DNA of 64,000 bases from Laetmonice hystrix (taxonomy: Eukaryota). Below the pieces are notes generated by a model that searched no databases, had not been told where the DNA came from, and saw only the letters and a program-made list of their open reading frames with translations. Below, piece by piece: positions 1-17,357 of this stretch; within the stretch, counting starts at the first letter, position 1, and each line of letters starts with the position of its first letter. Location: contig OZ249440.1 in the NCBI GenBank assembly GCA_965235115.1, positions 18,352,001-18,416,000 on the forward strand, in the 5' to 3' direction. The translations under genes and the position numbers were made by a program.

Positions 1-1250
1 TTTCATCACCTTTTAATGTGGCGATACAGAGGCGAATCCAGGAACCTGAACGGTACGCTGGGAAAAGAGTCCGACCAAATCGGTAAAGGAATACCTAGCC
101 GAGGGTTACCCTCAATTAAGTTGTAACATAAATGTTTAATATCGGTTGTGTTTATAAGCGCAGACAAACAAATACATGTTTTGAGGGCATCCCCTGCGGT
201 GGTTCTATTATTAGGTACGAACACTGAATAATTCTCATCCACTGAGCAGTGCTGTTTTAACTTTAGCCTTTAGGACGCATAAAATAATCTTTTATCATGC
301 ATGTGTAGAGAACGGGAACTTATAGGTACGACAAATATGTTTTTCTTTATGCATCTATTTTTGTTTTTCTTGGTATCAAAAATGAAGATATAACGTGCAG
401 AAGGAGTTAAATATGGTTCACACTTCAGATAAATTGCTGTATCATTTAACATGTTTTCGCACCATTTGGGAAACCCGATTTATTTTTATCAGCCAAGAGC
501 AGCTCTTCGGTTTCAAGACCATCCCAGTGACGCCCCAGGAGTCTTAGTCAAACCATAAATATGATTTAGTACAATCCTGACCATCGTTTAATCGTATTTT
601 GTTCGCTCGTTCTTCAAACTGAGCGATGGAAAGTGACGGATCTCGACAGGACTGTGACCGATCTGGTTAATATTCATGTCTAGGCGAGGGACAGGTTGTC
701 AGTTGTAACCTCTGCTGGCTGGCAATGGATGCCAATTTAAAGACTTCAATAGTGGCCCGAGGCGTTTGTCATCAGGTACCTTCGATACGTGCATGTCGGG
801 CCGTGCTGTGACTGTCAGCACATACCGAACACTTTGAAGTCAATTAACAGTTATCCGCCGCCAACTCGCACCTACTGTCAACTAACTGCCACCGACACCG
901 TTATAGTCGTACTCTAGAGTCATATATCACTCAAGGCGACCCCTCCTACACCATTATACTTATCCAAAAGTTATTTCATGGCTGTGTCTGTCATTCTCTT
1001 CCGATAAATTTCATGTGGTCACGTATATCTTGATTTTAGTGTTCTTTTATACAGAAATTGCGACTGTCGGGATGTGGTGTTCAAGTAGATCTATTTGAAA
1101 CGATGATGTCCAGAAACACAATGAGAAAATGACCGATATATAACCAACTCAAAACTTTTTGGGGGGCTGGGGTGGAAGTTGGGGGGGGGGGTAAAAATGG
1201 CCACATTTTTGGGGGATTTTAAAACATTTCTAAATACACCATCACATTAC

Positions 1251-4200
1251 CTTTTTCGTCCATAGATGTCATGGAGATGGCCGTTCTGGTGAGGTCGTGA
1301 TCTATAAACTGTCCCCATATCATGAGGAGGAGGGTGTGTAGTTTACTCGGTCGGTCAACGTCAGCGAAGATGTGCAGACTGACATGGCGAGGTCCCGGCA
1401 GTGGTCCACCCAGCACAGAGTGACGCATACTGTCTATACCTGTACACATCAATGTCACCTTTACCGTCAAAACTCGCAATACTATTGTCATTATCAGAGC
1501 TAGTCAGTTCGGCTGGCCTATATACATGCCAGAAATGTCACAGGAAATGAGATGGGCGAATTGGCTTGTTGGCCTTTTCTTGTGCGACAAATGGAGCAAA
1601 CCTTACACGGTCGATACAAGGCGCCGGAAGGCAAACCTTACACGGTCGATACAAGGCGCCGGAAGGCAAACCTTACACGGTCGATACAAGGCGCCGGAAG
1701 GCAAACCTTACACGGTCGATACAAGGCGCCGGAAGAACAGGAGGAGGACGAGAAGATGGTGGTGAAGGAGGGAGAAAGGGGAGGAAGTTAAGGAGGTGGA
1801 AAAGGAGGGGGAGGAATTGAAGTGTTGGTATTACACTTACCGTCACCATACACGGCTGGTACAAGGCGCCGGTGGAGGAGGACGAGAAGATGGAGGAATA
1901 GGAGGAGGAGGAGGAGGAGGGGGAGGAGGAGGAGAAGGAGGGAGACGAGGAAGAATCGAAGTGTTGGTATTACACTTACCGTCACCATACACGGCTGGTA
2001 CAAGTCGCCGGTGGAGGAGGACGAGAAGATGGAGAAATAGGTTGTGGAGGAGGAGGAGGAGGATAAGGAGAAGGAGGAAGAGGAGGAAGAATCGAGGTGT
2101 TGGTATTACACTTACCGTCACCATACACGGCTGGTACAAGTCGCCGGTGGAGGAGGACGAGAAGATGGAGGAATAGGAGGAGGAGGAGGAGGAGGAGGAG
2201 GGGAGGAGGAGGAGGATAAGGAGAAGGAGGAAGAGTCGAAGTGTTGGTATTACACTTACCGTCACCATACACGGCTGGTACAAGCCGCCGGTGGAGGAGC
2301 ACAAGAAGATGGAGGAATAGGAGGAGGAGAAGGAGAAGGAGGAAGAGGAGGAAGAATCGAAGTGTTGTTATTACACTTACCGTCACCATACACGGCTGGT
2401 ACAAGGCGCCGGTGTGGCGTCATAGAACGACCCCACAAAGGTTCCACCAAGTTGTTACAGCTGCCGTCGATGGTCCGGTATCTGCCACAAGAATCCGATG
2501 TAAGCGATACCGGAAATCGTCTCATTCGGGTTGGGTGGAGTTAGTGGGTTGTATCATAGTATTATTGAGCTTTACGTAAGAATATAACTTGATTTTAAAA
2601 GTTCTTTTTTAAAAGGGTGTGCTAAGTACCTGTGACTATGCCGCCAGGCATAGATTGCTGAATTGATTGGTGCTCTTAATTTGATGCGCAGCCAAGAACT
2701 GGCTAAAACACCAAAGTTTTTTTTAACGAAATCGTCTCATTCGGGTTGGGTGGAGTTAGTGGGTTGTATCATAGTATTATTGAGCTTTACGTAAGAATAT
2801 AACTTGATTTTAAAAGTTCTTTTTTAAAAGGGTGTGCTAAGTACCTGTGACTATGCCGCCAGGCATAGATTGCTGAATTGATTGGTGCTCTTAATTTGAT
2901 GCGCAGCCAAGAACTGGCTAAAACACCAAAGTTTTTTTTAACAAGGTCGCGTAGCTGAATCGGCCTTTTCATCAATTATGTCAATCTATAATGCAGTCAT
3001 GTTTCACATTTCACAATAACTTTTTTTTTATAAGATTTGTTTTTTAGTCAAGGTTATTTGCTACGATTAATTATTTCAGATTTCATTGATAGTTAAACAT
3101 TTTACTAAAGTAACGAAGAGCTTGTGTTAATATCTCTGCATACAGCTGATATTATCATCAAATATAAGGTTTAACTGACATCACAACAAGTCATGACTTC
3201 TTGATGCTCAGGGAAACGCGGAGTTCTAAATATTTCTTGTAAATGATAGATTTTTCTGAAATACTTTTTTTGTTAATCGTAAGGGCGAGTAACGTTCTTT
3301 ACGAGGGCAGGTTTACAACGGAACCGTTTTCAAGCCGAGCGTCCTGTAGAGGTGGCAGCTCAGTATTAATTACAAACCCAGGAATGTGCTAAATGTCAGA
3401 TACAATGTCGTGATATGCTTGCATCCAATGGTCTATAGAAATGCTGACAACTCTGACACACGAAGACATCGAGCTGCCATGTGCACGAGTTAATTGTCAT
3501 TTCGGTTATTAACGATTCCGTTGACTTCCACGACACAGTTTACGTTTTATTTCGTTGACATATGTTTTATCTTTTATTTTCAATATCTAGCATAGAGCAA
3601 GGCTTGGGGGAAAATTGTAATAACCAGCTGAAGTCTTATGAATGGAGGGGACCCTGAAGCATACACATTGGCTATGGATGATACGTACCAATGATGACTA
3701 TAATCAGACTATTACAGATGGGTTGGGACAGAAATAAGTGTCGAAATACCCATGGTACTTACCTCCGATGGCTGTCACAGATGTAGTGGGTTGGGTATGG
3801 ACAGAAGTCAATATCGGAGGAAACCTATGGTACATACTTGTGATGGCTGTCACAGATGTAGTGGGTTGGGTATGGGCAGAAGTCAATATCGGAGGAAACC
3901 TATGGTACTTACCTCCGATGGCTGTCACAGATGTAGTGGGTTGGGTATGGGCAGAAGTCAATATCGGAGGAAACCTATGGTACATAGGCCTACTTGTGAT
4001 GGCTGCCACAGATGTAGTGGGTTGGGTATGGGCAGAAGTCAATATCGGAGGAAACCTATGGTACTTACCTCCGATGGCTGTCACAGATGTAGTGGGTTGG
4101 GTATGGACAGAAGTCAATATCGGAGGAAACCTATGGTACATACTTGTGATGGCTGTCACAGATGTAGTGGGTTGGGTATGGACAGAAGTCAATATCGGAG

Positions 4201-7200
4201 GAAACCTATGGTACATACTTGTGATGGCTGTCACAGATGTAGTGGGTTGGGTATGGACAGAAGTCAATATCGGAGGAAACCTATGGTACATAGGCCTACT
4301 TGTGATGGCTGTCACAGATGTAGTGGGTTGGGTATGGACAGAAGTCGATATCGGAGGAAACCTATGGTACATACTTGTGATGGCTGTCACAGATGTAGTG
4401 GGTTGGGTATGGACAGAAGTCAATATCGGAGGAAACCTATGGTACTTACCTCCGATGGCTGTCACAGATGTAGTGGGTTGGGTATGGACAGAAGTCAATT
4501 TCGGAGGAAACCTATGGTACATACTTGTGATGGCTGTCACAGATGTAGTGGGTTGGGTATGGACAGAAGTCAATATCGGAGGAAACCTTTGGTACATACT
4601 TGTGATGGCTGTCACAGATGTAGTGGGTTGGGTATGGACAGAAGTCAATATCGGAGGAAACCTATGGTACATACTTGTGATGGCTGTCACAGATGTAGTG
4701 GGTTGGGTATGGACAGAAGTCGATTTCGGAAGGAACCTCCATCCGAGTATCAGGAATTCCAGGTTTCAACATCGGTCGCAAGGATAAATGACTGGGAGGA
4801 TGTCCGCGGTACCTGCATTCAATAGATTTTAAATACTCATGTTCAAAAGGACAGGAATAAATAGCGCACGCTATTGTTGGTGAATGAGACAAGGTTACGG
4901 CAAGGGCACCACCAACATTGGCTATCATACAAAACGGCAATCACCAGGTTAATAGTTTAAATGTGTATATGGCGAATCCGTTTAACATGGCAGATATTTT
5001 ATATCGATCTCGTCTAATTATTGAGTAGTTAATCTCCAGAATATACGTATCACTGTTAATTTTAATTGTCGAGTTAATCACCAAGCGGAAATAATAATGG
5101 CCATTCCTTACGTTATTATGCTATAAATTAACCATGCAGTGCTAAATATAGACAAACCGTGTCCGATCTAAAGGTCGCCAAGCAAAATACTACTTCTTGC
5201 CTACTTCTTTCTCCCTAACCTTTATAGTAATTTACAAAAACGGCACATTTCCTTCCCCTTTTTTCTTTAATTGGCAATATTTATTTAATTTTTCCCACCT
5301 CAACCATTAAGTGACTGTTAAAGATATTATTAATTATCAGGACTTCCTCCCGAAGGCGTGCCAATCACGCAGAACTTGTACAATGCCTCACCTCTCTTTT
5401 AGAATTCTTGTGGCTTGGAGAATTGTCGCCCCAGCGTACGACAAGTACTTGGCGTACGGCTTGGCATACAAGAAGGCCGACACGTAACGATACGGCGCCG
5501 AATCAATAACATCTGTAAAAAGAACATTAATGGTGTAGGCGTGGCCATGTTCACTGCAAGGTTTGATAGCCGGATTATGAAATCCAAGTCCATAGCATAC
5601 TCTAGATAACTAAAGTTACTTTATCTCTTATACGTAATATTATACTGGACATGATGGATGACCCGGTACGTATCTATAAGGGACTTACTGTATCAATGAT
5701 ATGATACATTACGTCATTCTCCGTACAAGTACCCTCCATTATAACTGGTACCTCCCTCAAGGTCAGTACCACCTCTGAGAGTTGGTTGTACTTACTGTGC
5801 ATCTTCCGGGCCACGCCAGCTTCAATTCGTATCCGCTGATAAACGATGTTAACTGCACGCCTCAACGTGCCATGACCTCCACCTTCGAAATCAAAATAAT
5901 TAAACTAATTCAAAATGTCAAACGTAGCTAGCAAGTTTTTGTTTTATCTATTGATTAAATCTTTTGTAAATTCACCTGTTTAACAGTATTTCTTTCCGTA
6001 TCCTTAATTATCTAAATATCTACTCATACTGTAAATTGTCCTGCCTAAATATCTACTTATGCTGTAAAATGTCCTGACAAAATATCTACTCATGCTGTAA
6101 AATGTACTGCCTAAATATCTACTTATGCTGTAAAATGTCCTGACAAAATATCTACTCATGCTGTAAAATGTACTGCCTAAATATCTACTTATGCTGTAAA
6201 AATGTACTGCCTGAATATCTACGTATGCTGTAAAATGTACTGCCTAAATGCTGTAAAACGTACTGCCTAAATATCTACTGATGCTGTAAAACGTACTGAC
6301 CTGACCTGCGTCCATGTCCGTGTCCCGATCGGAAGGAGAAGGGTTCCCCATGATCGTGATGAGAGTTGAAAACTTTCGGAATCCTATTATCATGAAATCC
6401 GTATATGGTTTCAACATATTCATGATCGTGCAGAGCCTTCGGACCAAAGAAATCAGACACAATTCTTTTGGATTCGCTGGAAGGACCGGTCATCATCTCT
6501 TCTGTGAAAGTGAATACATCAATGTCTGCACTCTTTTTGGATCGACTGAGAGAATTCGTTCTTCGGTCTCCAAAGGGATCATATTGAAAGCTTTTCTTTG
6601 ATTTTGCGTGGCCTTTCTCTTTCTTGGCTTTCTTTCTCAGGTTATTGCTATGATGTTCATAGGGTCTGTCGCTAAGTGTCGTCCCTGATGGTACTGTTCC
6701 ATGATGTACGTGGTACACGTCTTGATGTACGTCTCTGTGTATACTTCTACGTGACCGACCGGAACGACCTCTAGCGGGTGATTTCACTTGGTCTGCACCA
6801 GGAGTATGCGCGGTGTCCTTCGTAACTTTCTCAGAATCTCCGTCATCACTCGGCTTTTGGTCACTGGCCACGCGATTGTCAGTGAAGTCATACTGCACCT
6901 CGCCATTATCGTCTAGACCGACATTTTTAACGCCCCCAAAACCACTGACTCCGCCACTGCCTCCAAATCCAGAGAATCCCATACTATCTCCAGAAAATAA
7001 CGGGCCCGTCAGATGTTTGGGAAGAAACGTATACGGGAAGTTGTCAAAGTCAGGTGGTTTCCGGCCGTGATGTTCGTGGTGTCCATCTTTTTTAGGCTCA
7101 TCTTTCTTGTCTTTGCGATCCTTACGTTTCTTTTGGCCACCTCCATTTTTACCGTGTCCACGGGGAGCCTGTCCTCGCTGGTAGTAAGGGTCTCTTTTAG

Positions 7201-10200
7201 TATTCTGCCGACGTTTTCCGTCTCTTGATTGGTCGTATGAATCTCGGTCTTGTTTCTGTGAGTTCCTGTTGTACGCCTGACGATCAGATCCCTGACTGTA
7301 ACCTCCCTGGTTGTAGTCTCGACTGTCATGATAATCGTTTCTGTCAGTGTCGTACTCTTGTCTACCTCTGTGGTCCACCCTTGTGTTGGTGTCCCGATGG
7401 CTGTACCTTTGGGGTTGATAATCACCATGCTCTCCACTCGACGGGTGGTAGCTCTCATGTCTACTGCTTGCAGACTCCTGATGATGAGAGTGTTGTGGTC
7501 GGGCTGAGTAATCATTAGTATAACCTCTGGAATAAACTGGACTGTGGGAAGTCTTGCCGGAGTTCAATCTACCTGAATACTCCTCTTCGATGTGGGGATG
7601 GCGTTTTCTATTATCGTGGTAGTGGCCAGATGAAAGCTGCAGCCCCGCATCAACATAGTTGTTACTGTTGTCAGGGGTTACTCGATCATGATAGCGGTAA
7701 GCCTCTTTTTGGGAGGTATAACGTTCTGGTACGTAATCCTGTTCGTACGCCATCTTTGTCACTTGCCAAGGGTCCTTTGATTTCTTTGAGTGTGTGGAAT
7801 ATGGATGTGTCGACTGAGAGGATGGCTGGTACTTATCCCCCTGGTGGTGGCTGCTTGTACGAGGTTTTGTGTACACTTCCTCGTTTTGGCGGTAAACAGA
7901 GTGTACCGGACTTTGGTTGACATGGTTTCCTTGGTATGTCTGCCTTTCTCGTGGACTTTGGTTCTGACCTCTTGTATAGTACAAGTGAGCGGCGTACGTT
8001 TGCGGTTTGTCTGAAGAGTGTATAGAATAGACATCTCTGGTGCTGCGCTTTCTTCGACTTTTTGTCACGGTTTTAGCACTATTACCTTTAGAATGTCTTG
8101 TTTGGTCACGATGACTAATTTTGTCACTTATTGATTGCGTTTTGCCTGTCTCAACTTTAGAAGGACTAGCGACACGATGGTCGGTGAAGTCATACTGCAC
8201 CTCGCCATTATCGTCCAGACCGACATTTTTAACGCCCCCAAAACCACTGACTCCGCCACTGCCTCCAAATCCAGAGAATCCCATACTATCTCCAGAAAAC
8301 AACGGGCCCGTCAGATGTTTGGGAAGAAACGTATACGGGAAGTTGTCAAAGTCGGGTGGTTTCCGACCGTGGTGTTCGTGGTGTCCATCTTTTTTAGGCT
8401 CATCTTTCTTGTCTTTGCGATCCTTACGTTTCTTTTGGCCACCTCCATTTTTACCGTCTCCACGGGGAGCCTGTCCTCGCTGGTAGTAAGGGTCTCTTTT
8501 AGTATTCTGCCGACGTTTTCTGTCTCTTGATTGGTCGTATGAATCTCGGTCTTGTTTCTGTGAGTTCCTGTTGTACGCCTGACGATCAGATCCCTGACTG
8601 TGACCTCCCTGGTTGTAGTCTCGACTGTCATGATAATCGTTTCTGTCAGTGTCGTACTCCTGTCTACCTCTGTGGTCCACCCTTCTGTTGGTGTCCCCAT
8701 GGCTGTACCTCTGGGGTTGATAATCACCATGCTCTCCACTCGACGGGTGGTAGCTCTCATGTCTATTGCTTGCAGACTCCTGATGATGGGAGTGTTGTGG
8801 TCGGGCTGAGTAATCATTAGTATAACCTTCACTGGAATAGACTGGACTGTGGGACGTCTTGCCGGAGTTCAAGCTATACTCTTGGGGTTGATAATCGTGG
8901 TATTCCCTCCTGGCCCGCTGGTAGCTCTCCTGTCTATTGGTTGCATATTGCTGACGTTGAGCATTGTTGTTGTAACCTCCACTTGCATAGACTGGACTCT
9001 CGAAACTCTTTCCAGAATAGGCCTCTTGATAGCGTGGAAAGTGCCCACGGCTATCGTGGTATTGACTTTCTGGATATGCCTTTGTGTGTTGTGGACTTTG
9101 GTTCTTGGTATTTGTATAATAGAAATGATCAGCATAGGTTTTTGGCTTTGCTGAGGAGTGTGAATAGGGATTGGCGTAGCTCCTCGCACTTCGCCTTCTG
9201 CGTCTCCCTGTGAAAGTATAAGAATCTGTATCATTTGTTTTTACAGGGACAGTCTGAAGAAGACTAGCTTGGCGATTGTCGGTAAAATCGTATTGCACCT
9301 CTCCATCATTGCTGCCATGACGTTTACCTAAACCTGAAACTCCAGCATTGTCACCGGAATACAGAGGTTCAGTAAAATGATCAGATTGGGAACTGTATGG
9401 GGGACGATAAAAGTGTGAACCATCTTGGAACGCACTTCTCTTACTACCTTCCTGTTTCTTTTGTACATAATTGAAACTAGAACGTTTGCCTTTTATGGAC
9501 GTCAGTTTTCTAAGTATTGCTCTTAAGAGTCCGATTTTCACGTCAGTGTTGCCGTCCGTATCATATCCGTCTCCACCCTCGGAATAATCCGAGTATGGGT
9601 CATTGTCCTTTGTATCCTGGTAAGTTTCCGAGTCGCTGTGGCCCCAAGAACCTCCCTTTGGTGAGGGATACGTAGTGGTTCGATGTGACCTCCCAAAGAA
9701 GGGAGACTGAGTCGTGGTTCTTGGTGCATACCCATGTTTAGCAGTCTGGCTTTCGCCGGATGGATATGTTGAATCTAAATATGGATAATAGTCTATGTCG
9801 TCGTCGAAGTCTGAGTACTTTTTAGAATGGCTTTCCTCGCCATTGTGAGGACCATCTATATCGTCTGCAGCGTACTTTTCGTCTGTATAGTCGGGATGGT
9901 TCAAATATGACGTGTCCGTGGTAGATTCTTGAGAGGGGAACCCGGAGTCGTAACTGTTCGGTTTTTGGTCATAATCCGCGTAGGACGCGGCAATATCGGC
10001 CGCCCGTAATTTCTCAAGGTCTTTGTCGGAAGCTCCGGACGTCGTCGACCGGCTGTCAGTGTAGTCAAAGTGGATCTGCCCAAGCATGTCACTGTCGAAT
10101 CCAGGGAAACTGCCCAATCCTTTGCGACCCTGAATTACAGGTTTAGTCAGGTGATTTGGTGGTAATATATCAAGGAATGCAGGCATATTGGATGAGGTAT

Positions 10201-12496
10201 ATTGGCGACGCCCCTGTGTATGCTTTGCATTGTAAAGAGGAAACTTCCTCTGGGAATGTCGCAGATTTGTTCCTTCTTGATAAGGAGTGTTTTTAATACC
10301 CTGGCGAGAGTAAAGACTCCGGACGGGTGAGGAATTATTAACGTAGCCTGGCAGGCTGTGAATCCCTGCAGAAAACGACTGAGACATATATGAAGGGGGA
10401 TTGTATGAGAACGGTTGAAGAGGCTTGTTTACCTGAACCGTCGGGTTTGAGAAACTGAAAGTTTTTGCTGATGGCATGTGCTGTTGTTGATAATATGGAT
10501 TATCTAACTGTTTTCTACCACCAAGAATTCTCTTGTACAGCTCCAGTTGATTGAACATAGTCTTATCGATCGACCCACTCTCCTCTTGATTAGCCTGACC
10601 CCATGAATTATAAAAAGATTGTTTAATGTCGCTTACAGAAGATCCCAAGTTAAACTCAGGTGAAGGCGTATAGTGGTATGTGTCCATAAGGTTACCAACC
10701 TTTCCACTTGAGAGTTTGTTGTCTGGGTTACCTTCTCCTGAGAGAATCCCCATCTCCCAATTTCTCATGTCCTCGTCAGCCTCCTCTTTCAGTTTGGAAA
10801 AGTGTGCCTCATTAGCCAGATTTTCCAGTGAGAAATGGTCGGATTTGAGCGGAGCAGGGGTGCTCACTCCTTTCACAAGAGGAGGTGCGACGATTTGCGG
10901 CGGTAGGTGGCCCTTGGATAGAGAAAAGACGGGCCCTGAACCCATGCTTGGCTCTCCGGGATAAAACCTCGAGCCGGGCATCCTCATGGTTGTCGGTGCT
11001 CGCTGTGTCAGTTGTTGGCGTGCTTTGGCAGCGAGCGGAATCCTCAGGTACCATGGTATAAGCACGCGTACAACAGTTTTCCTTCCCGTTGGGTCCTTGC
11101 GGGACAGTTCCACGTAAGGTTTGCCGCCTCTTGCCAGCTGCAGCTGTAGCCGCCGGAGGCGACTGTCATCATGTGAGGTGGCCGGGGGACGGGGCCTGGC
11201 CGTGTAACTGTCCATATTAATGGACCAATCCGGGAACAATCCACGGAATCCAGGTTTGCTCATCTCCTGTCGTGGAAGCTGGAGGGGTTCGAATGGGCTG
11301 GCACCCAAGGAAGGAACTCTGCTTTTAGTGACTACATTGGGGGACGAAAAGTACAGATGAGGCACAATACTGTAAGGCATTTTAACGAATGATGCAAGGA
11401 AACCTATTTTGCAAATTGGTTACGTATACGGATTGTATAAAGTATAAATTTAATTGGATTTTAACCTTGTATGTTCTTTCATTCTGTCATATGTCATGAG
11501 CATAAATTATTCACCATAATGAATTTGGCTACACGATTAATAATTGATTGCAGCTAAATTAATGGAATTGAACACATCCTCCTTTCTGTGTCATTGAATG
11601 ACATTTATAACGCACCCTAACAAGTGACACCGTACTGCTTCCTTTCACTTCCAAACCATACCCCTCATTATATTCATCTTCCTATCTATACCGGAAGTAC
11701 TGTTTCCGTACAATAATTGAAGATGGTGAGGAGACCAGAAGATAAATCAAGGTAAAGAAAACGTGAAGCAAACCTACAATACCTTGTTTTTGCCAACTGC
11801 CTATAGCGTTGATCCGTTGAATACAAGGTGATGGTGAGGATGCGTCACACTTTAACGCCACGCGGCTGAAGTAAGTACCAGTGGGGCAGCGCCTAGAAAA
11901 CGCCACCTGGTGCAGACATTCTATGTAGAACAGACATCCTCTCCTGTCAGGTATATTTCCATTTGGTCGACCAAGACATGGATTACTTGTGTCTGCATGT
12001 AGAAACAAGAGTTTTCAAATCAGGGACAGACAGTACTATAGTGCGTTTCATGCATATACAATGTACATTGTACAATATAATGATCAATGATTCATGATGT
12101 TGGAAAGGCCCGCGGTGGAAAGAATAGTTATCAAACCATCAATCTGATCAGAAAAAGATAATATTTAATGCATTACTATATGAATGCGGAGGTATCAAAC
12201 ATACTCAGACGTGGAGAGCGACTGTCTCCTGATTCGTATACTCTACAGTTCTTCAATCAAATCTCCTTGGGCCTATAATGTGTATTACAATCATCGACGT
12301 GCCACATCTTTATTCAAATGGATCAAAAGAACATGTAATTATTTCTCACCGCTACACGATTCAGCTGAGTAAAGGAGGCCAAGCATGATAAATCAAACCT
12401 TGAATGGTTTCCGCCAGCTGGGGAAGAAGGCCAACGAAAACCAACAGAAGTAGACGATGAATCCAGGGTGGATGGACACTGACCGCACCGCCGGAG
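1251..12496 (-). CDS. Giant secreted/anchored animal heme peroxidase (peroxidase-cyclooxygenase superfamily) with N-terminal chitin-binding domain and ~1,680-aa low-complexity spacer; 3' part lies outside the window
   Basis: Eight exons with AG/GT boundaries that join in a consistent phase: 12496-12399 (SSGGAVSVHPPWIHRLLLLVFVGLLPQLAETIQ), 11992-11783 (ChtBD2), 11331-6301 (giant exon), 5882-5796 (GGGHGTLRRAVNIVYQRIRIEAGVARKMH), 5512-5392 (NVIDSAPYRYVSAFLYAKPYAKYLSYAGATILQATRILKER), 4812-4675 (YRGHPP...EIDFCPYPTHYICDSHHK), 2481-2381 (YRTIDGSCNNLVEPLWGRSMTPHRRLVPAVYGD), 1439-1251 (GIDSMRHSVLGGPLPGPRHVS...LMIWGQFIDHDLTRT). YRTIDGSCNNL and WGQFIDHD (distal His motif) are hallmark animal peroxidase motifs. 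Start codon not established. Confidence 0.85.
1596..1735. repeat. 35-bp tandem repeat x4, a degenerate derivative of the peroxidase exon-end sequence
   Basis: Unit gcaaaccttacacggtcgatacaaggcgccggaag at 1596, 1631, 1666, 1701; resembles ccatacacggctggtacaaggcgccgg of exon 2381-2481. Confidence 0.9.
1736..2380 (-). repeat. Intronic array of exon-end + 5' splice-site cassettes separated by (GGA)n tracts
   Basis: On the minus strand ...CTTGTACCAGCCGTGTATGGTGACG|GTAAGTGTAATACCAACACTTC recurs with donor junctions at 2260, 2116, 1980 and 1841, downstream of the true donor at 2381. Confidence 0.9.
2513..2942. repeat. Near-perfect 215-bp direct tandem duplication (2 copies)
   Basis: gaaatcgtctcattcgggttggg...ccaaagttttttt(t)aac starts at 2513 and again at 2728. 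Confidence 0.9.
3752..4735 (-). repeat. 75/81-bp tandem array (13 units) made of a peroxidase exon 3' end plus its splice donor
   Basis: Unit (minus) GATATTGACTTCTGTCCATACCCAACCCACTACATCTGTGACAGCCATCACAA|GTATGTACCATAGGTTTCCTCC. The highest-coordinate unit is the real exon end (donor at 4675). Unit count taken from the 349-aa antisense ORF (11x25 + 2x27 aa). Confidence 0.95.
6014..6300. repeat. ~33-bp tandem repeat (~8-9 copies) beginning at the donor of the giant exon
   Basis: Unit aaatatctacttatgctgtaaaatgtactgcct; on the minus strand it repeats the first ~33 nt of the intron (GTCAGTACGTTTTACAGCATCAGTAGATATTTA). Confidence 0.85.
6301..11331 (-). CDS. 5,031-nt coding exon: intrinsically disordered Ser/Gly/His/Tyr/Gln/Arg-rich spacer with furin-type sites
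   Basis: Uninterrupted 1,701-codon ORF (6275-11380) trimmed by acceptor cccaatgtag|TC at 11331 and donor TCAG|gtcagt at 6301. Length 2+1676x3+1 matches phase-1 neighbours on both sides. No Cys seen in the translation. Confidence 0.85.
6866..8872 (-). repeat. ~700-bp intra-exonic duplication (copies ~6866-7567 and ~8169-8872; ~233 aa each)
   Basis: LNSGKTSHSPVYS...PPDFDNFPYTFLPKHLTGPLFSGDSMGFSGFGG...EVQYDFTD(H/N)RVAS appears twice, nearly identical, with one 3-nt indel. Confidence 0.95.
11783..11992 (-). CDS. Exon encoding a peritrophin-A / chitin-binding type-2 (ChtBD2, CBM14) domain
   Basis: C-LGRPNGNIPDRRG-C-LFYIE-C-LHQVAFSRR-C-PTGTYFSRVALK-C-DASSPSP-C = C-x13-C-x5-C-x9-C-x12-C-x7-C, canonical spacing with aromatics in the expected positions; phase-1/phase-1 exon (catgcag|AC ... 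CAAG|gtattg). Confidence 0.9.
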
Positions 12497-13877
12497 CTGT
12501 AACATTAGGACCACATCATCAGGACCACATCATACATAGCAGATTATGACACATCATCAGCATCCAGGACTCAGGTCCTTAGGACATAATTGTATTTTTT
12601 GACTATTTAATAATGGAAGCCCTGGCGTTTGGTATCCAGCCATGCTGTACTCGTGACATCGTGATGTGGTATTAATGATGGTGGTCTACGAGTTGTCTCT
12701 CGTCAATGTACTACATGTCGTTCTTTTCATGACAAGAATTTTGTAACCTGAGTGAACATAGGGAAGCTGTTTTGGTGGTCCGCCACCTGGAGGACTCTGG
12801 GCGTCTCCTGGGGAATGTTCGGAGTGATTATTATGGCAGGCAAACTGATGGAGGACAACCCGGCTCAACTTGTGAATTATGTTTACTGTTCACGGTGCCT
12901 GCGCCAGGGTGTGACAGGCATCCTCGTGGGCAGTCGGAACATTAAAATTGGCCATGCACCGTATGAGTTCCTTTGATTACTGCATGATGTCCTGAATGCA
13001 ATCCGAACAGCGCAATAAAAGTCAGTTACATGGCGAGGAGAACTTGTTTCATATATGATGTGCTTATTAAGAAGCCTTTTGACAGTGGTTATATAAGGTG
13101 TGTGCCTTTACGTCTAAAGGTTAAACTTCAACGCCGAAAAACTCCTAGAAACATGAGCTAAAATGAAACGTATTCACCCCACATTTTTAGCTGAGCATTT
13201 TCAGGGCTTCACGGAATCTACCGGAGTTCCGTTAATATTTTCTGGACGTACCATGATCGTCTACTCACAAGACTCCTATAACTTTCTGTCTCTATCCTTA
13301 TACTTAAAAACAAGGACCATAATCCTAGAAAGAACCCAATGTCCTGTTGAAACGCATTCCCACCGTCCTGGACAGTGAGTATATAGTTTGGGAAAATATC
13401 GTAGTGATCAAGGAGTGATGGTCGTTAAACAGAACCGAGCCTTGTTACAATGTGTGCGACAGATGTCGGTCTGGCGGGATCAGTCAGCATTATTTAGTCG
13501 TCAGTCTGCCTTACAAAGAATGTGATATGAGGAGTTGTGATACTTGCTATTTTAGGGAACCAGGGTTCATTACCATTCATGAGGTCCATAACCATAAATA
13601 AACAAAACACTATGCACATATTCAAACTAAAAGATGCCTTTCAGTATCACAGCCATTGTACCTGTTTATAACGTACAATAATTATTATGTAGTTCAATGT
13701 TCCCACTTACCGAACCCACAGGCCCATTGTTGGACAAATCAGCAATTGGTCCGTGGAGATCTTCTCAACGCTGGCAAAACGGGGCTCGTTGGAAGGACGT
13801 CAACTGCTCGAATCATGTGTTGTAGACATTCTCCCGATCGGCCTACAATAAGATAGTCGGGAGTTTTAATCTACCTA

Positions 13878-17201: not shown

Positions 17202-17357
17202 NNNNNNNNNNNNNNNNNNNNNNNNNNNNNNNNNNNNNNNNNNNNNNNNNNNNNNNNNNNNNNNNNNNNNNNNNNNNNNNNNNNNNNNNNNNNNNNNNNN
17301 NNNNNNNNNNNNNNNNNNNNNNNNNNNNNNNNNNNNNNNNNNNNNNNNNNNNNNNNN
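17202..17357. other. Assembly gap (156 N)
   Basis: Run of N. Confidence 1.

What the first reader, a model, noticed from the sequence alone, without database searches (positions are those of the whole stretch)
6301..11331. The giant spacer looks like a furin-processed polyprotein with a repeated module
Seen: a conserved block G-S/L/F-G...(D/N)GEVQYDFTD(N/H)R occurs three times (~9275-9310, ~8172-8210, ~6870-6910), with a degenerate GQIHFDYTDSR (~10050-10081). Each of the three is followed within ~20-50 aa by an R-x-(K/R)-R site: RRRRRSAR (~9182-9205), RRKRSTR (~8035-8056), RSRRS (~6742-6757). Two of these sites are followed by homologous starts (..YSHSSAKPKTYADHFYYT / ..YSIHSSDKPQTYAAHLYYT). 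Further sites are RLRR (~11150) and RKRR (~8510). No Cys seen in ~1,680 aa. Known: furin-type convertases cleave after R-x-K/R-R. Inference: maturation would release several Tyr/His-rich ~150-450-aa structural chains and free the peroxidase; the acidic-aromatic QYDFTD block may be an assembly or sorting motif.
Basis: partly seen in the sequence, partly recalled or inferred. Interest (0 to 1): 0.7.

Follow-up and report, generated by a model that had tools for sequence, protein, structure and literature searches.

The report
Annelid chitin-matrix polyprotein with furin sites
A huge, floppy, cysteine-free exon of a probable annelid worm gene belongs to an undescribed family of chitin-associated secreted proteins in which a strongly conserved 85-residue block is always followed by a conserved furin-type cutting site, so the protein is probably chopped into repeated tyrosine/histidine-rich chains, although no RNA or protein data yet show it.

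Summary
It is a real, single-copy coding exon. Reads of the same sample show no indels, and dN/dS between two internal copies is 0.19. It lies in splice phase behind a CBM14 chitin-binding exon. Only three other assemblies among 1.84 billion representative proteins hold relatives. All four relatives' loci I could read keep the CBM14 exon upstream.

The QYDFTD block is the tail of an ~85-residue block. That block is about 95% identical between this gene and its closest relative, where the rest is 35-45% identical.

Each full block is followed by R-x-K/R-R before Ser or His, mostly K-x-R-x-K-R, inside an otherwise unalignable linker. There are 3 such sites here, 6 in the closest relative (five near-identical 462-aa modules) and 1 in each distant lineage. 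The chance of such a site after the block there is 0.07 and 0.03. AlphaFold models the module as disordered, and the genome holds at least five convertase P-domain loci.

RLRR and RKRR are not conserved. Two of the three copies lie in a recently homogenised tract. The splice to the downstream peroxidase is unproven. Cleavage itself is untested. This is a new family, but a known kind of arrangement (compare Pif and nematode polyproteins).

The parts
12399..12496 (-). Signal-peptide-like exon: hydrophobic core RLLLLVFVGLL, then PQLAETIQ. It ends in phase 1. No in-frame ATG here, so the start codon was not found.
   Evidence: Read from the sequence. Phase matches the CBM14 exon. The relatives' loci L005 and L008 have an ATG-started equivalent (M..PLLLLLILV) about 2 kb upstream of their CBM14 exon.
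11783..11992 (-). CBM14 (peritrophin-A) chitin-binding exon; acceptor cag|AC, donor AAG|GTATTG, phase 1 at both ends.
   Evidence: Pfam PF01607, E 2e-10, 41 bits against a cut-off of 22. Sequence. A homologous exon lies 0.8-2 kb upstream of the giant exon in all four relatives' loci.
6301..11331 (-). Giant Cys-free, low-complexity coding exon (about 1677 codons). Phase-1 acceptor tgtag|TC at 11331. Donor CAG|GTCAGT at 6301 (phase 1) or CAG|GTCAGG at 6306 (phase 2).
   Evidence: 1701-codon open frame. No Pfam hit. Single copy in the genome. No indels in DNA contigs of the same sample. dN/dS 0.19 between internal copies. Relatives P0001-P0005.
11006..11128 (-). N-terminal conserved patch (..VVRVLIPWYLRIP..), shared with the closest relative.
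   Evidence: Pairwise alignment with P0001.
10040..10198 (-). Degenerate block copy M0 (..LPPNHLTKPV..GQIHFDYTDSR). No R-x-K/R-R site follows it.
   Evidence: The same site-less first copy exists in P0001.
9263..9400 (-). Block copy 1: an old, shortened paralogue that lacks the GFGG loop and the His/Lys lead-in.
9188..9205 (-). Site 1, RRRRR|S, 22 aa after block 1.
   Evidence: Aligned with the sites of the other modules.
8045..9190 (-). Predicted chain B (382 aa, pI 9.6, Tyr 8%, His 7%). Starts SARSYANPYSHSSAKPKTYA and ends at site 2.
8165..8416 (-). Block copy 2, full 84-aa form (KDKKDEP .. HEHHGRKPPDF .. PKHLTGPLF .. GFGG loop .. NGEVQYDFTDHRVA).
   Evidence: About 95% identical to P0001's blocks.
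8042..8062 (-). Site 2, KSRRKR|S, 40 aa after block 2.
   Evidence: P0001 has KNRKKR|S at the same place.
6746..8044 (-). Predicted chain C (433 aa, pI 9.3). Starts STRDVYSIHSSDKPQTYA and ends at site 3.
   Evidence: AlphaFold mean pLDDT 38.8.
6863..7114 (-). Block copy 3, full form.
6743..6763 (-). Site 3, GRSRR|S, 39 aa after block 3.
   Evidence: P0001 has SRSRR|S in an otherwise unalignable linker.
6302..6745 (-). C-terminal tail (148 aa, His 11%) with the family-wide ..ETI(H/Y)G.. patch. Conservation with P0001 stops at HGR(R)SG, which is at the proposed donor.
6854..7609 (-). Recently homogenised tract, copy B. Its partner is 8156-8908.
   Evidence: dS 0.114, dN 0.022. Contig depth roughly doubles over the repeat.
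1222..2540 (-). First two animal haem peroxidase exons on the same strand. The domain continues about 8.3 kb past the window start. Its link to the giant exon is unproven.
   Evidence: Pfam PF03098, E 8e-11 and 5.5e-12, with further exons in L004. Frames.

Best explanation
The 5-kb exon is the body of a secreted, intrinsically disordered, Cys-free matrix-protein precursor rich in Tyr, His, Ser, Asp and Arg. The precursor starts with one CBM14 chitin-binding domain. It belongs to a small, undescribed, probably annelid-restricted family.

The family's hallmark is an ~85-residue block: a Lys/Asp-rich lead-in, a His cluster, GRKPPDF, PKHLTGPLF, a Gly/Phe loop and NGEVQYDFTDNRVA. A variable linker follows and ends in a proprotein-convertase site, typically K-x-R-x-K-R before Ser or His.

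Inferred mechanism: furin-type convertases in the secretory pathway cut after each site. Here that would give four products:
- a CBM14-bearing N-terminal chain of about 714 aa plus CBM14;
- two free basic chains of 382 and 433 aa, each with a conserved start (YS.HSS.KP.TYA.H.YYT) and the conserved block near its C-terminus;
- a His-rich tail joined to whatever the downstream exons encode, possibly the haem peroxidase.

The modules multiplied by tandem duplication in register with the cut sites: 2 here and 5 in the closest relative. They are kept alike by conversion. The chains most likely become part of a chitin-based hard or barrier structure, where Tyr and His would allow oxidative or metal cross-linking.

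Shown: the coding status, the family, the architecture, the conservation of block and sites, the predicted disorder, and the presence of convertases. Inferred: the secretion start, the cleavage, the material role and the peroxidase link.
For: Coding and intact:
- 1701-codon frame, single copy, no indels in contigs of the same sample.
- dS 0.114 against dN 0.022 between internal copies, binomial P about 1e-4.

Secreted and chitin-linked:
- CBM14 exon in phase with the giant exon.
- That exon is conserved upstream in L005-L008.
- Signal-like exons.

Family: P0001 (44% identity, 3327 aa), P0002/4 and P0003/5 are the only hits among 1.84 billion representatives.

Block: 34 invariant columns across lineages. 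It is about 95% identical to P0001, where the rest of the module is 35-45% identical.

Sites:
- P0001 has 6 sites in 3327 aa, every one after a block and none elsewhere.
- Each distant lineage has one site after its block: KARNKR|H and KGRAKR|S. Chance of that is 0.068 and 0.028.
- In this gene: 6 against about 2 expected, and 3 of 4 blocks are followed by a site, P about 0.001.

Accessibility: module mean pLDDT 38.8, and linkers below 50.

Enzyme: at least 5 convertase P-domain loci.

Precedent: the mollusc CBM14 protein Pif is cut at RMKR into a chitin-binding part and a disordered part (PMC11291548).
Against: - There is no RNA run for this organism, so exon joins, expression and tissue are unknown.
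- No in-frame ATG precedes the signal-like core in this genome.
- The three sites here descend from one ancestral site, and two lie next to a recently homogenised tract. Independent support therefore comes mainly from the other species.
- Those species number only three assemblies of unknown taxonomy.
- Basic residues are common (R 7.7%, K 6.6%).
- Motif presence never proves cleavage.
- The block gives no confident fold (pLDDT 54) and no match to any known family, so its role is open.
Confidence: 0.6

Rival explanations
1. Uncleaved tether. The exon is a permanent disordered spacer between the chitin anchor and the downstream domain. The conserved basic hexamers would then serve another purpose, such as binding polyanions like sulfated glycans or phosphorylated partners, or acting only as rarely used regulatory cuts.
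For: No cleavage data exist. The chains are basic overall (pI 9.3-9.6) and hold further basic clusters just before each block. The downstream peroxidase exons lie on the same strand, with no ATG-started signal-like exon of their own in between.
Against: The conserved element is exactly the convertase consensus, with a basic P6 and a small P1' residue. It is kept in linkers that are otherwise unalignable. The modules duplicate in register with the sites, and each begins with a conserved start motif. The other basic clusters and the other R-x-K/R-R matches are not conserved.
Confidence: 0.22
2. Prohormone-like precursor. The real product is the conserved 85-residue block, or parts of it, released by cuts in the basic cluster upstream (KKRKDRKDKK) and at the R-x-K/R-R site downstream. 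It would act as a ligand or signalling peptide, and the Tyr/His-rich stretches would be spacers.
For: The block is by far the most conserved part. It is flanked by basic clusters on both sides. Multi-copy precursors are typical of peptide signals.
Against: The upstream basic cluster holds no conserved convertase consensus across lineages. A CBM14 anchor, chains with 6-10% Tyr and a 1200-3300-aa size are typical of matrix proteins, not hormone precursors. The post-site start motif and the mid-module Tyr positions are also conserved (34 and more invariant columns outside the block).
Confidence: 0.1
3. No function. The pattern is only the echo of tandem duplication inside a decaying or unexpressed low-complexity open frame.
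For: Two of the three copies are 94-97% identical. There is no RNA evidence. No start codon was found for the signal-like exon.
Against: A 5.1-kb open frame cannot survive by chance. dN/dS is 0.19. Relatives keep the same architecture at 20-44% identity. The frame is intact in reads.
Confidence: 0.04

Closest known systems
Pif / BMSP shell-matrix proteins of molluscs (Pif 177 cut into Pif 97 and Pif 80)
   Same: A lophotrochozoan secreted precursor. It carries a peritrophin-A type chitin-binding domain in the N-terminal part and a charged, low-complexity C-terminal part. It is cut at a single R-x-K-R site (RMKR) into two cooperating matrix proteins (PMC11291548).
   Different: Pif has VWA domains and an Asp-rich mineral-binding part. 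It has one cut and no repeated modules. The protein here has no VWA or any other Pfam domain in the giant exon. It has a family-specific 85-aa block and 3-6 cuts. No sequence similarity to Pif was found.
Nematode polyprotein allergens (ABA-1 type) and, from my own knowledge, profilaggrin
   Same: Large, tandemly repetitive precursors cleaved after translation into many near-identical units (PMC3079579 abstract). Copy number differs between species. From my own knowledge, profilaggrin units are also His-rich.
   Different: NPA units are folded helical lipid binders of about 15 kDa. Here the units are 380-460-aa disordered chains, and the precursor starts with a chitin-binding domain. There is no homology (Pfam blank).
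Single-CBM14 proteins with long disordered regions (arthropod peritrophins, CPAP1-type cuticle proteins) and pro-resilin (my own knowledge)
   Same: One chitin-binding domain plus a long Tyr-containing disordered region, which in resilin is cured by peroxidase-made dityrosine links. A haem peroxidase lies next to, or within, this gene.
   Different: Those families are not known to be convertase-processed polyproteins. None carries the conserved block. Resilin uses an R&R chitin-binding domain, not CBM14.

Membership tests
Furin-type proprotein convertase substrates | R-x-K/R-R motif | tested here: met
   Three conserved sites (RRRRR|S, RRKR|S, RSRR|S) and three non-conserved matches.
Furin-type proprotein convertase substrates | Entry into the secretory pathway (signal peptide) | tested here: inconclusive
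   A signal-like hydrophobic exon lies in phase with the CBM14 exon, but it has no in-frame ATG here. ATG-started equivalents exist in L005 and L008. CBM14 domains are extracellular (established knowledge).
Furin-type proprotein convertase substrates | Site exposed in a flexible region | tested here: met
   AlphaFold pLDDT is below 50 over the linkers, and the module mean is 38.8.
Furin-type proprotein convertase substrates | Site conserved in orthologues | tested here: met
   P0001 has 6 of 6 sites after blocks. L008 and L007 have one site each after the block, with chance 0.068 and 0.028.
Furin-type proprotein convertase substrates | Convertase present in the organism | tested here: met
   PF01483 P-domain matches at 5 or more loci, best E 3.8e-23.
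Furin-type proprotein convertase substrates | Cleavage observed | not testable with these tools
   No RNA or protein data. Only DNA contigs of one sample were available.
CBM14 / peritrophin-A chitin-binding proteins | CBM14 domain over Pfam's threshold | tested here: met
   PF01607, 41.1 bits against a cut-off of 22.1.
CBM14 / peritrophin-A chitin-binding proteins | Domain on the same transcript as the giant exon | tested here: inconclusive
   Donor and acceptor are both phase 1. The same exon order is kept in four relatives' loci. No RNA is available to confirm the join.
Pif / BMSP | VWA domain(s) next to the chitin-binding domain | tested here: not met
   No Pfam family in the giant exon or in P0001 and P0003. 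No VWA exon was seen between the signal-like and CBM14 exons.
Nematode polyprotein allergens | Sequence homology of the repeat unit | tested here: not met
   The Pfam scan is blank. The profile search against PDB is blank. The module is modelled as disordered.
   Peroxidase exons lie downstream on the same strand, with no signal-like ATG exon in between. A direct join is in frame only from the weaker donor at 6306. The distant relatives use a phase-1 donor and show no peroxidase within 10 kb.

The most novel reading that the evidence does not exclude
One gene may encode a complete self-curing kit for a chitin-based material: a chitin anchor, several convertase-released Tyr/His-rich substrate chains, and the haem peroxidase that cross-links them. 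The invariant 85-residue block would be a new docking or assembly element that brings each released chain to the enzyme, to chitin or to each other. Candidate features are a β-hairpin around DDNG-EVQYDF, a His cluster for metal binding and an FG-type loop.
Probability: 0.15. Interest if true: 0.75.

Novelty: new variant of a known kind. Interest (0 to 1): 0.5.

Why it matters
Annelid hard parts such as chaetae, jaws and tubes are model biomaterials, yet few of their proteins are known. This gene defines an unannotated family with no Pfam model, no paper and no named protein. It has an unusually clear built-in logic: an anchor, repeated chains, a nearly invariant block and conserved cutting sites. 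That logic gives directly testable predictions, namely the exact new N-termini, the chain sizes and the copy-number differences between species. If the peroxidase really is part of the same precursor, substrate and cross-linking enzyme would be delivered together in fixed proportion, which would be a new design principle. If not, this remains a useful new example of convertase-processed matrix polyproteins outside molluscs and nematodes.

Tried and rejected
- Word-indexed protein search with the whole frame: blank. The relatives appeared only with the exhaustive HMMER scan.
- Two further searches, one on the block region and one with a family profile, added no members.
- Pfam on the exon and on the relatives: blank.
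- Block profile against PDB sequences: only noise, E above 2.
- ESM Atlas feature search: best score 0.84 on unnamed clusters, which is at shuffled-sequence level.
- AlphaFold of the block (pLDDT 54) and of the module (38.8) gave no fold worth a fold search.
- Full-text search for the motif strings: no paper. Topic searches gave nothing specific.
- RNA evidence: no RNA run holds the stretch. The three listed runs are short-read DNA contigs of one sample. They confirm the sequence but say nothing on expression.
- tblastn and tblastx of the relatives' downstream 10 kb against our peroxidase exons and our downstream 26 kb: nothing.
- DNA of P0001's contig could not be fetched, so the best test of the peroxidase link in a close relative was not possible.
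- My first dN/dS run was misaligned by a 1-aa indel and was redone.
- Rejected: a transposon or viral polyprotein (single copy, CBM14 synteny), and a chance open frame.
Full report
**What is there**

The minus strand of 6275-11380 holds one open frame of 1701 codons. Its composition is S 11.9, G 8.5, D 8.1, R 7.7, P/Y/K 6.6, Q 6.1 and H 5.5 per cent, with no Cys. It has no Pfam match.

R-x-K/R-R occurs at 6 distinct places against 1.4-2.1 expected from global or local shuffles. Three of the four blocks have a site 10-60 residues downstream, with P about 0.001.

**Is it a real gene part?**

- The frame is single copy in the 627-Mb assembly.
- Short-read DNA contigs of the same sample cover it. 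They show only single-base differences and no indels. Depth roughly doubles over the internal repeat, as expected for a collapsed two-copy repeat.
- Residues 852-1075 and 1286-1509 differ at 26 of 672 bases. That gives dS 0.114, dN 0.022 and dN/dS 0.19. The excess of silent changes has binomial P about 1e-4. Both copies have therefore been under protein-level selection.

**Gene model upstream**

- 11783-11992 is a CBM14 chitin-binding exon (PF01607, E 2e-10). Its donor AAG|GTATTG is phase 1. The acceptor tgtag|TC at 11331 is also phase 1.
- 12399-12496 encodes a signal-like hydrophobic core in phase with the CBM14 exon, but no in-frame ATG precedes it.

**Gene model downstream**

- The last eight codons and the stop of the open frame lie inside a 33-bp minisatellite. 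Similarity to the closest relative stops at HGR(R)SG, which is at the proposed donor. The exon therefore very probably ends at 6301 (CAG|GTCAGT, phase 1) or at 6306 (CAG|GTCAGG, phase 2).
- Animal haem peroxidase exons follow on the same strand from 2540 to about 8.3 kb beyond the window start (PF03098; frames).
- The first of these exons starts at profile position 1. Its likely acceptor (gag|A) needs a phase-2 donor. A direct join is therefore in frame only from 6306.
- A simple scan found no ATG-started hydrophobic exon between the two. It also found no AATAAA within 1 kb of the frame's stop.
- I rate the fusion as about even odds and unproven.

**Internal anatomy**

A self-comparison and alignments show modules.

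- Each module begins just after a basic site with S.R..YS.HSS.KP.TYA.H.YYT..QSP.
- It continues with a variable stretch rich in Tyr, His, Gln and Arg.
- It then has an 84-residue block: KDKKDEP, a His cluster, GRKPPDF, FPYTFLPKHLTGPLF, a Gly/Phe loop and NGEVQYDFTD.RVA.
- It ends with a 20-40-residue linker that closes with the basic site.

There are two full modules (382 and 433 aa). There is also an older shortened block with site 1, and a degenerate first block with no site.

Residues 825-1075 and 1258-1509 are 94-97% identical, while the module heads are only about 35% identical. This is a recent conversion or unequal-crossover tract at the 1302-nt module period, not a simple fresh duplication.

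**Relatives**

The exhaustive scan of 1.84 billion representative proteins gave only three clusters.

| Protein | Length | Source | Locus |
|---|---|---|---|
| P0001 | 3327 aa, 44% identity | ENA assembly ERZ26222911 | DNA not retrievable |
| P0002 / P0004 | 1096 / 1186 aa | ENA assembly ERZ25767047 | L005, L008 |
| P0003 / P0005 | 1186 / 1198 aa | Logan runs ERR14368248 / ERR14368249 | L007, L006 |

- None carries a name or a Pfam domain. Two further searches added nothing.
- All are open-frame calls on unannotated eukaryotic contigs.
- In all four retrievable loci a CBM14 exon lies 0.8-2 kb upstream on the same strand.
- In all four the giant exon starts with a phase-1 acceptor.
- In L005 and L008 an ATG-started signal peptide exon lies further upstream.
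- In both distant lineages the exon ends at a conserved GTAAGT donor in phase 1, which explains their shared ..SSKW ending. Downstream exons must therefore exist there too.
- No peroxidase is seen within the 10 kb available.

- The block is conserved in every relative. There are 34 invariant columns across lineages. It is about 95% identical between this gene and P0001, whose remaining module sequence is 35-45% identical.
- P0001 has seven blocks and six R-x-K/R-R sites in 3327 residues. Each site follows a block and none lies elsewhere: KNRKKR|S five times and SRSRR|S once. Its first, degenerate block has no site, exactly as here.
- Its five modules are 462 aa each and 96-99.6% identical to one another.
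- The distant lineages have one block each. One site follows it: KARNKR|H or KTRSKR|H 88 aa later, and KGRAKR|S 236 aa later. Local shuffles give a site in that interval in 6.8% and 2.8% of trials.
- Across lineages the site reads K-x-R-x-K-R before a small or polar residue. From my own knowledge of furin specificity, this is the extended furin preference (basic P6, P4, P2 and P1).
- The linkers around the sites cannot be aligned between species, while the sites can.
- RLRR, RARR and RKRR are not conserved. RKRR is already RDGKRR in this gene's own sister copy.

**Structure and enzyme**

- AlphaFold with the family alignments gives mean pLDDT 54 for the block and 38.8 for a whole module. The only modelled element is a small low-confidence hairpin, VGL / EVQ, around the DDNG turn.
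- The chains are therefore best read as intrinsically disordered, and the sites as accessible.
- The genome has at least five loci with convertase P-domains.

**Interpretation**

The data fit a secreted, chitin-associated matrix precursor that furin-type convertases cut after each block-linker unit.

The products here would be:
- a CBM14-bearing chain of about 714 aa plus CBM14;
- two basic chains of 382 and 433 aa (pI 9.3-9.6, Tyr 8%, His 7%);
- a His-rich 148-aa tail that continues into the next exon.

The modules have multiplied in register with the cut sites, 2 here against 5 in P0001. That pattern is expected if the cleavage product is the functional unit.

What the block does is open. 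Possibilities are an assembly or docking element, metal binding by the His cluster, a cross-linking or sulfated Tyr in the acidic EVQYDFTD context, or a granule-sorting signal. No tool gave a lead.

The chitin anchor, the high Tyr/His content and the neighbouring peroxidase point to a cured chitin-protein material such as chaetae, jaws or a gut lining. That is inference.

**Comparison with known systems**

- Functionally closest is molluscan Pif. It is a CBM14-containing precursor cut at RMKR into a chitin-binding and a disordered matrix protein (PMC11291548). Pif has VWA domains and a single cut, so this protein is not a member of that family.
- The repeated-module logic matches nematode polyprotein allergens (PMC3079579) and profilaggrin. 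There is no homology, and the units here are disordered rather than folded.
- The family itself appears undescribed. It has no Pfam model, no named protein, and no paper with the motif.

**Verdict**

The polyprotein reading is supported as far as sequence comparison can carry it, and I put functional processing at about 0.6. The peroxidase-release part and the block's role are unproven.

Earlier notes of this scan supplied the gene-model lead and the 'probably annelid' label. I checked the former only in part, and I did not test the latter.

Noticed in passing
window 6012-6298: A 33-bp minisatellite (9 copies) abuts the giant exon's donor and supplies the open frame's last eight codons and its stop. 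The apparent C-terminus QYVLQHQ is therefore almost certainly intronic read-through.
   Followed up: partly
window 2513-2942 and 1740-2350: A perfect 215-bp x2 tandem duplication copies the acceptor and the first bases of the first peroxidase exon. A 136-bp x4.4 array repeats that exon's end plus its GTAAGT donor (..RRLVPAVYGDG|gtaagt), embedded in GGA-rich sequence. These are several competing splice-site copies around one exon.
   Followed up: no
window 3748-4738: A 75-bp x13 (306-bp x3.3) tandem array sits in the 3.7-kb gap between the giant exon and the peroxidase exons. It is open in several frames on both strands. I did not resolve whether an exon lies there. Such an exon could reconcile the phase-1 donor at 6301 with the phase-2 acceptor of the peroxidase exon.
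   Followed up: no
window 12399-12505: The signal-like exon has no in-frame ATG, and a TAA precedes it. The nearby ATG at 12505 is one base out of frame with the hydrophobic core. The cause is an upstream mini-exon, a real frameshift or an assembly slip. My one read-laying run was used elsewhere.
   Followed up: partly
L005:13270-13291, L006:9020-9040 (also L007, L008): Two distant lineages share a GTAAGTGG donor at the end of their giant exons, in phase 1. Open-frame callers read it as a conserved ..SSKW C-terminus. The exon that follows was not found within 10 kb.
   Followed up: partly
L005:8960-9000 / L008 equivalent (exon residue about 89): The P0002/P0004 lineage has a second site, GRVKR|S, about 90 residues into the giant exon, upstream of the called Met. 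It is followed by a long poly-Gln/His stretch that this window's gene lacks. It recalls, but does not align with, the RLRR here.
   Followed up: no
window 17202-17357: A run of 156 N (a gap or masked stretch). I left it untouched.
   Followed up: no
window 6674-10511: 27 single-base differences between the assembly and the contigs of runs X1-X3. Most are probably heterozygous alleles, and there are no indels. Those near contig ends at 6865 and 7396 may instead be cross-talk between the two repeat copies.
   Followed up: no
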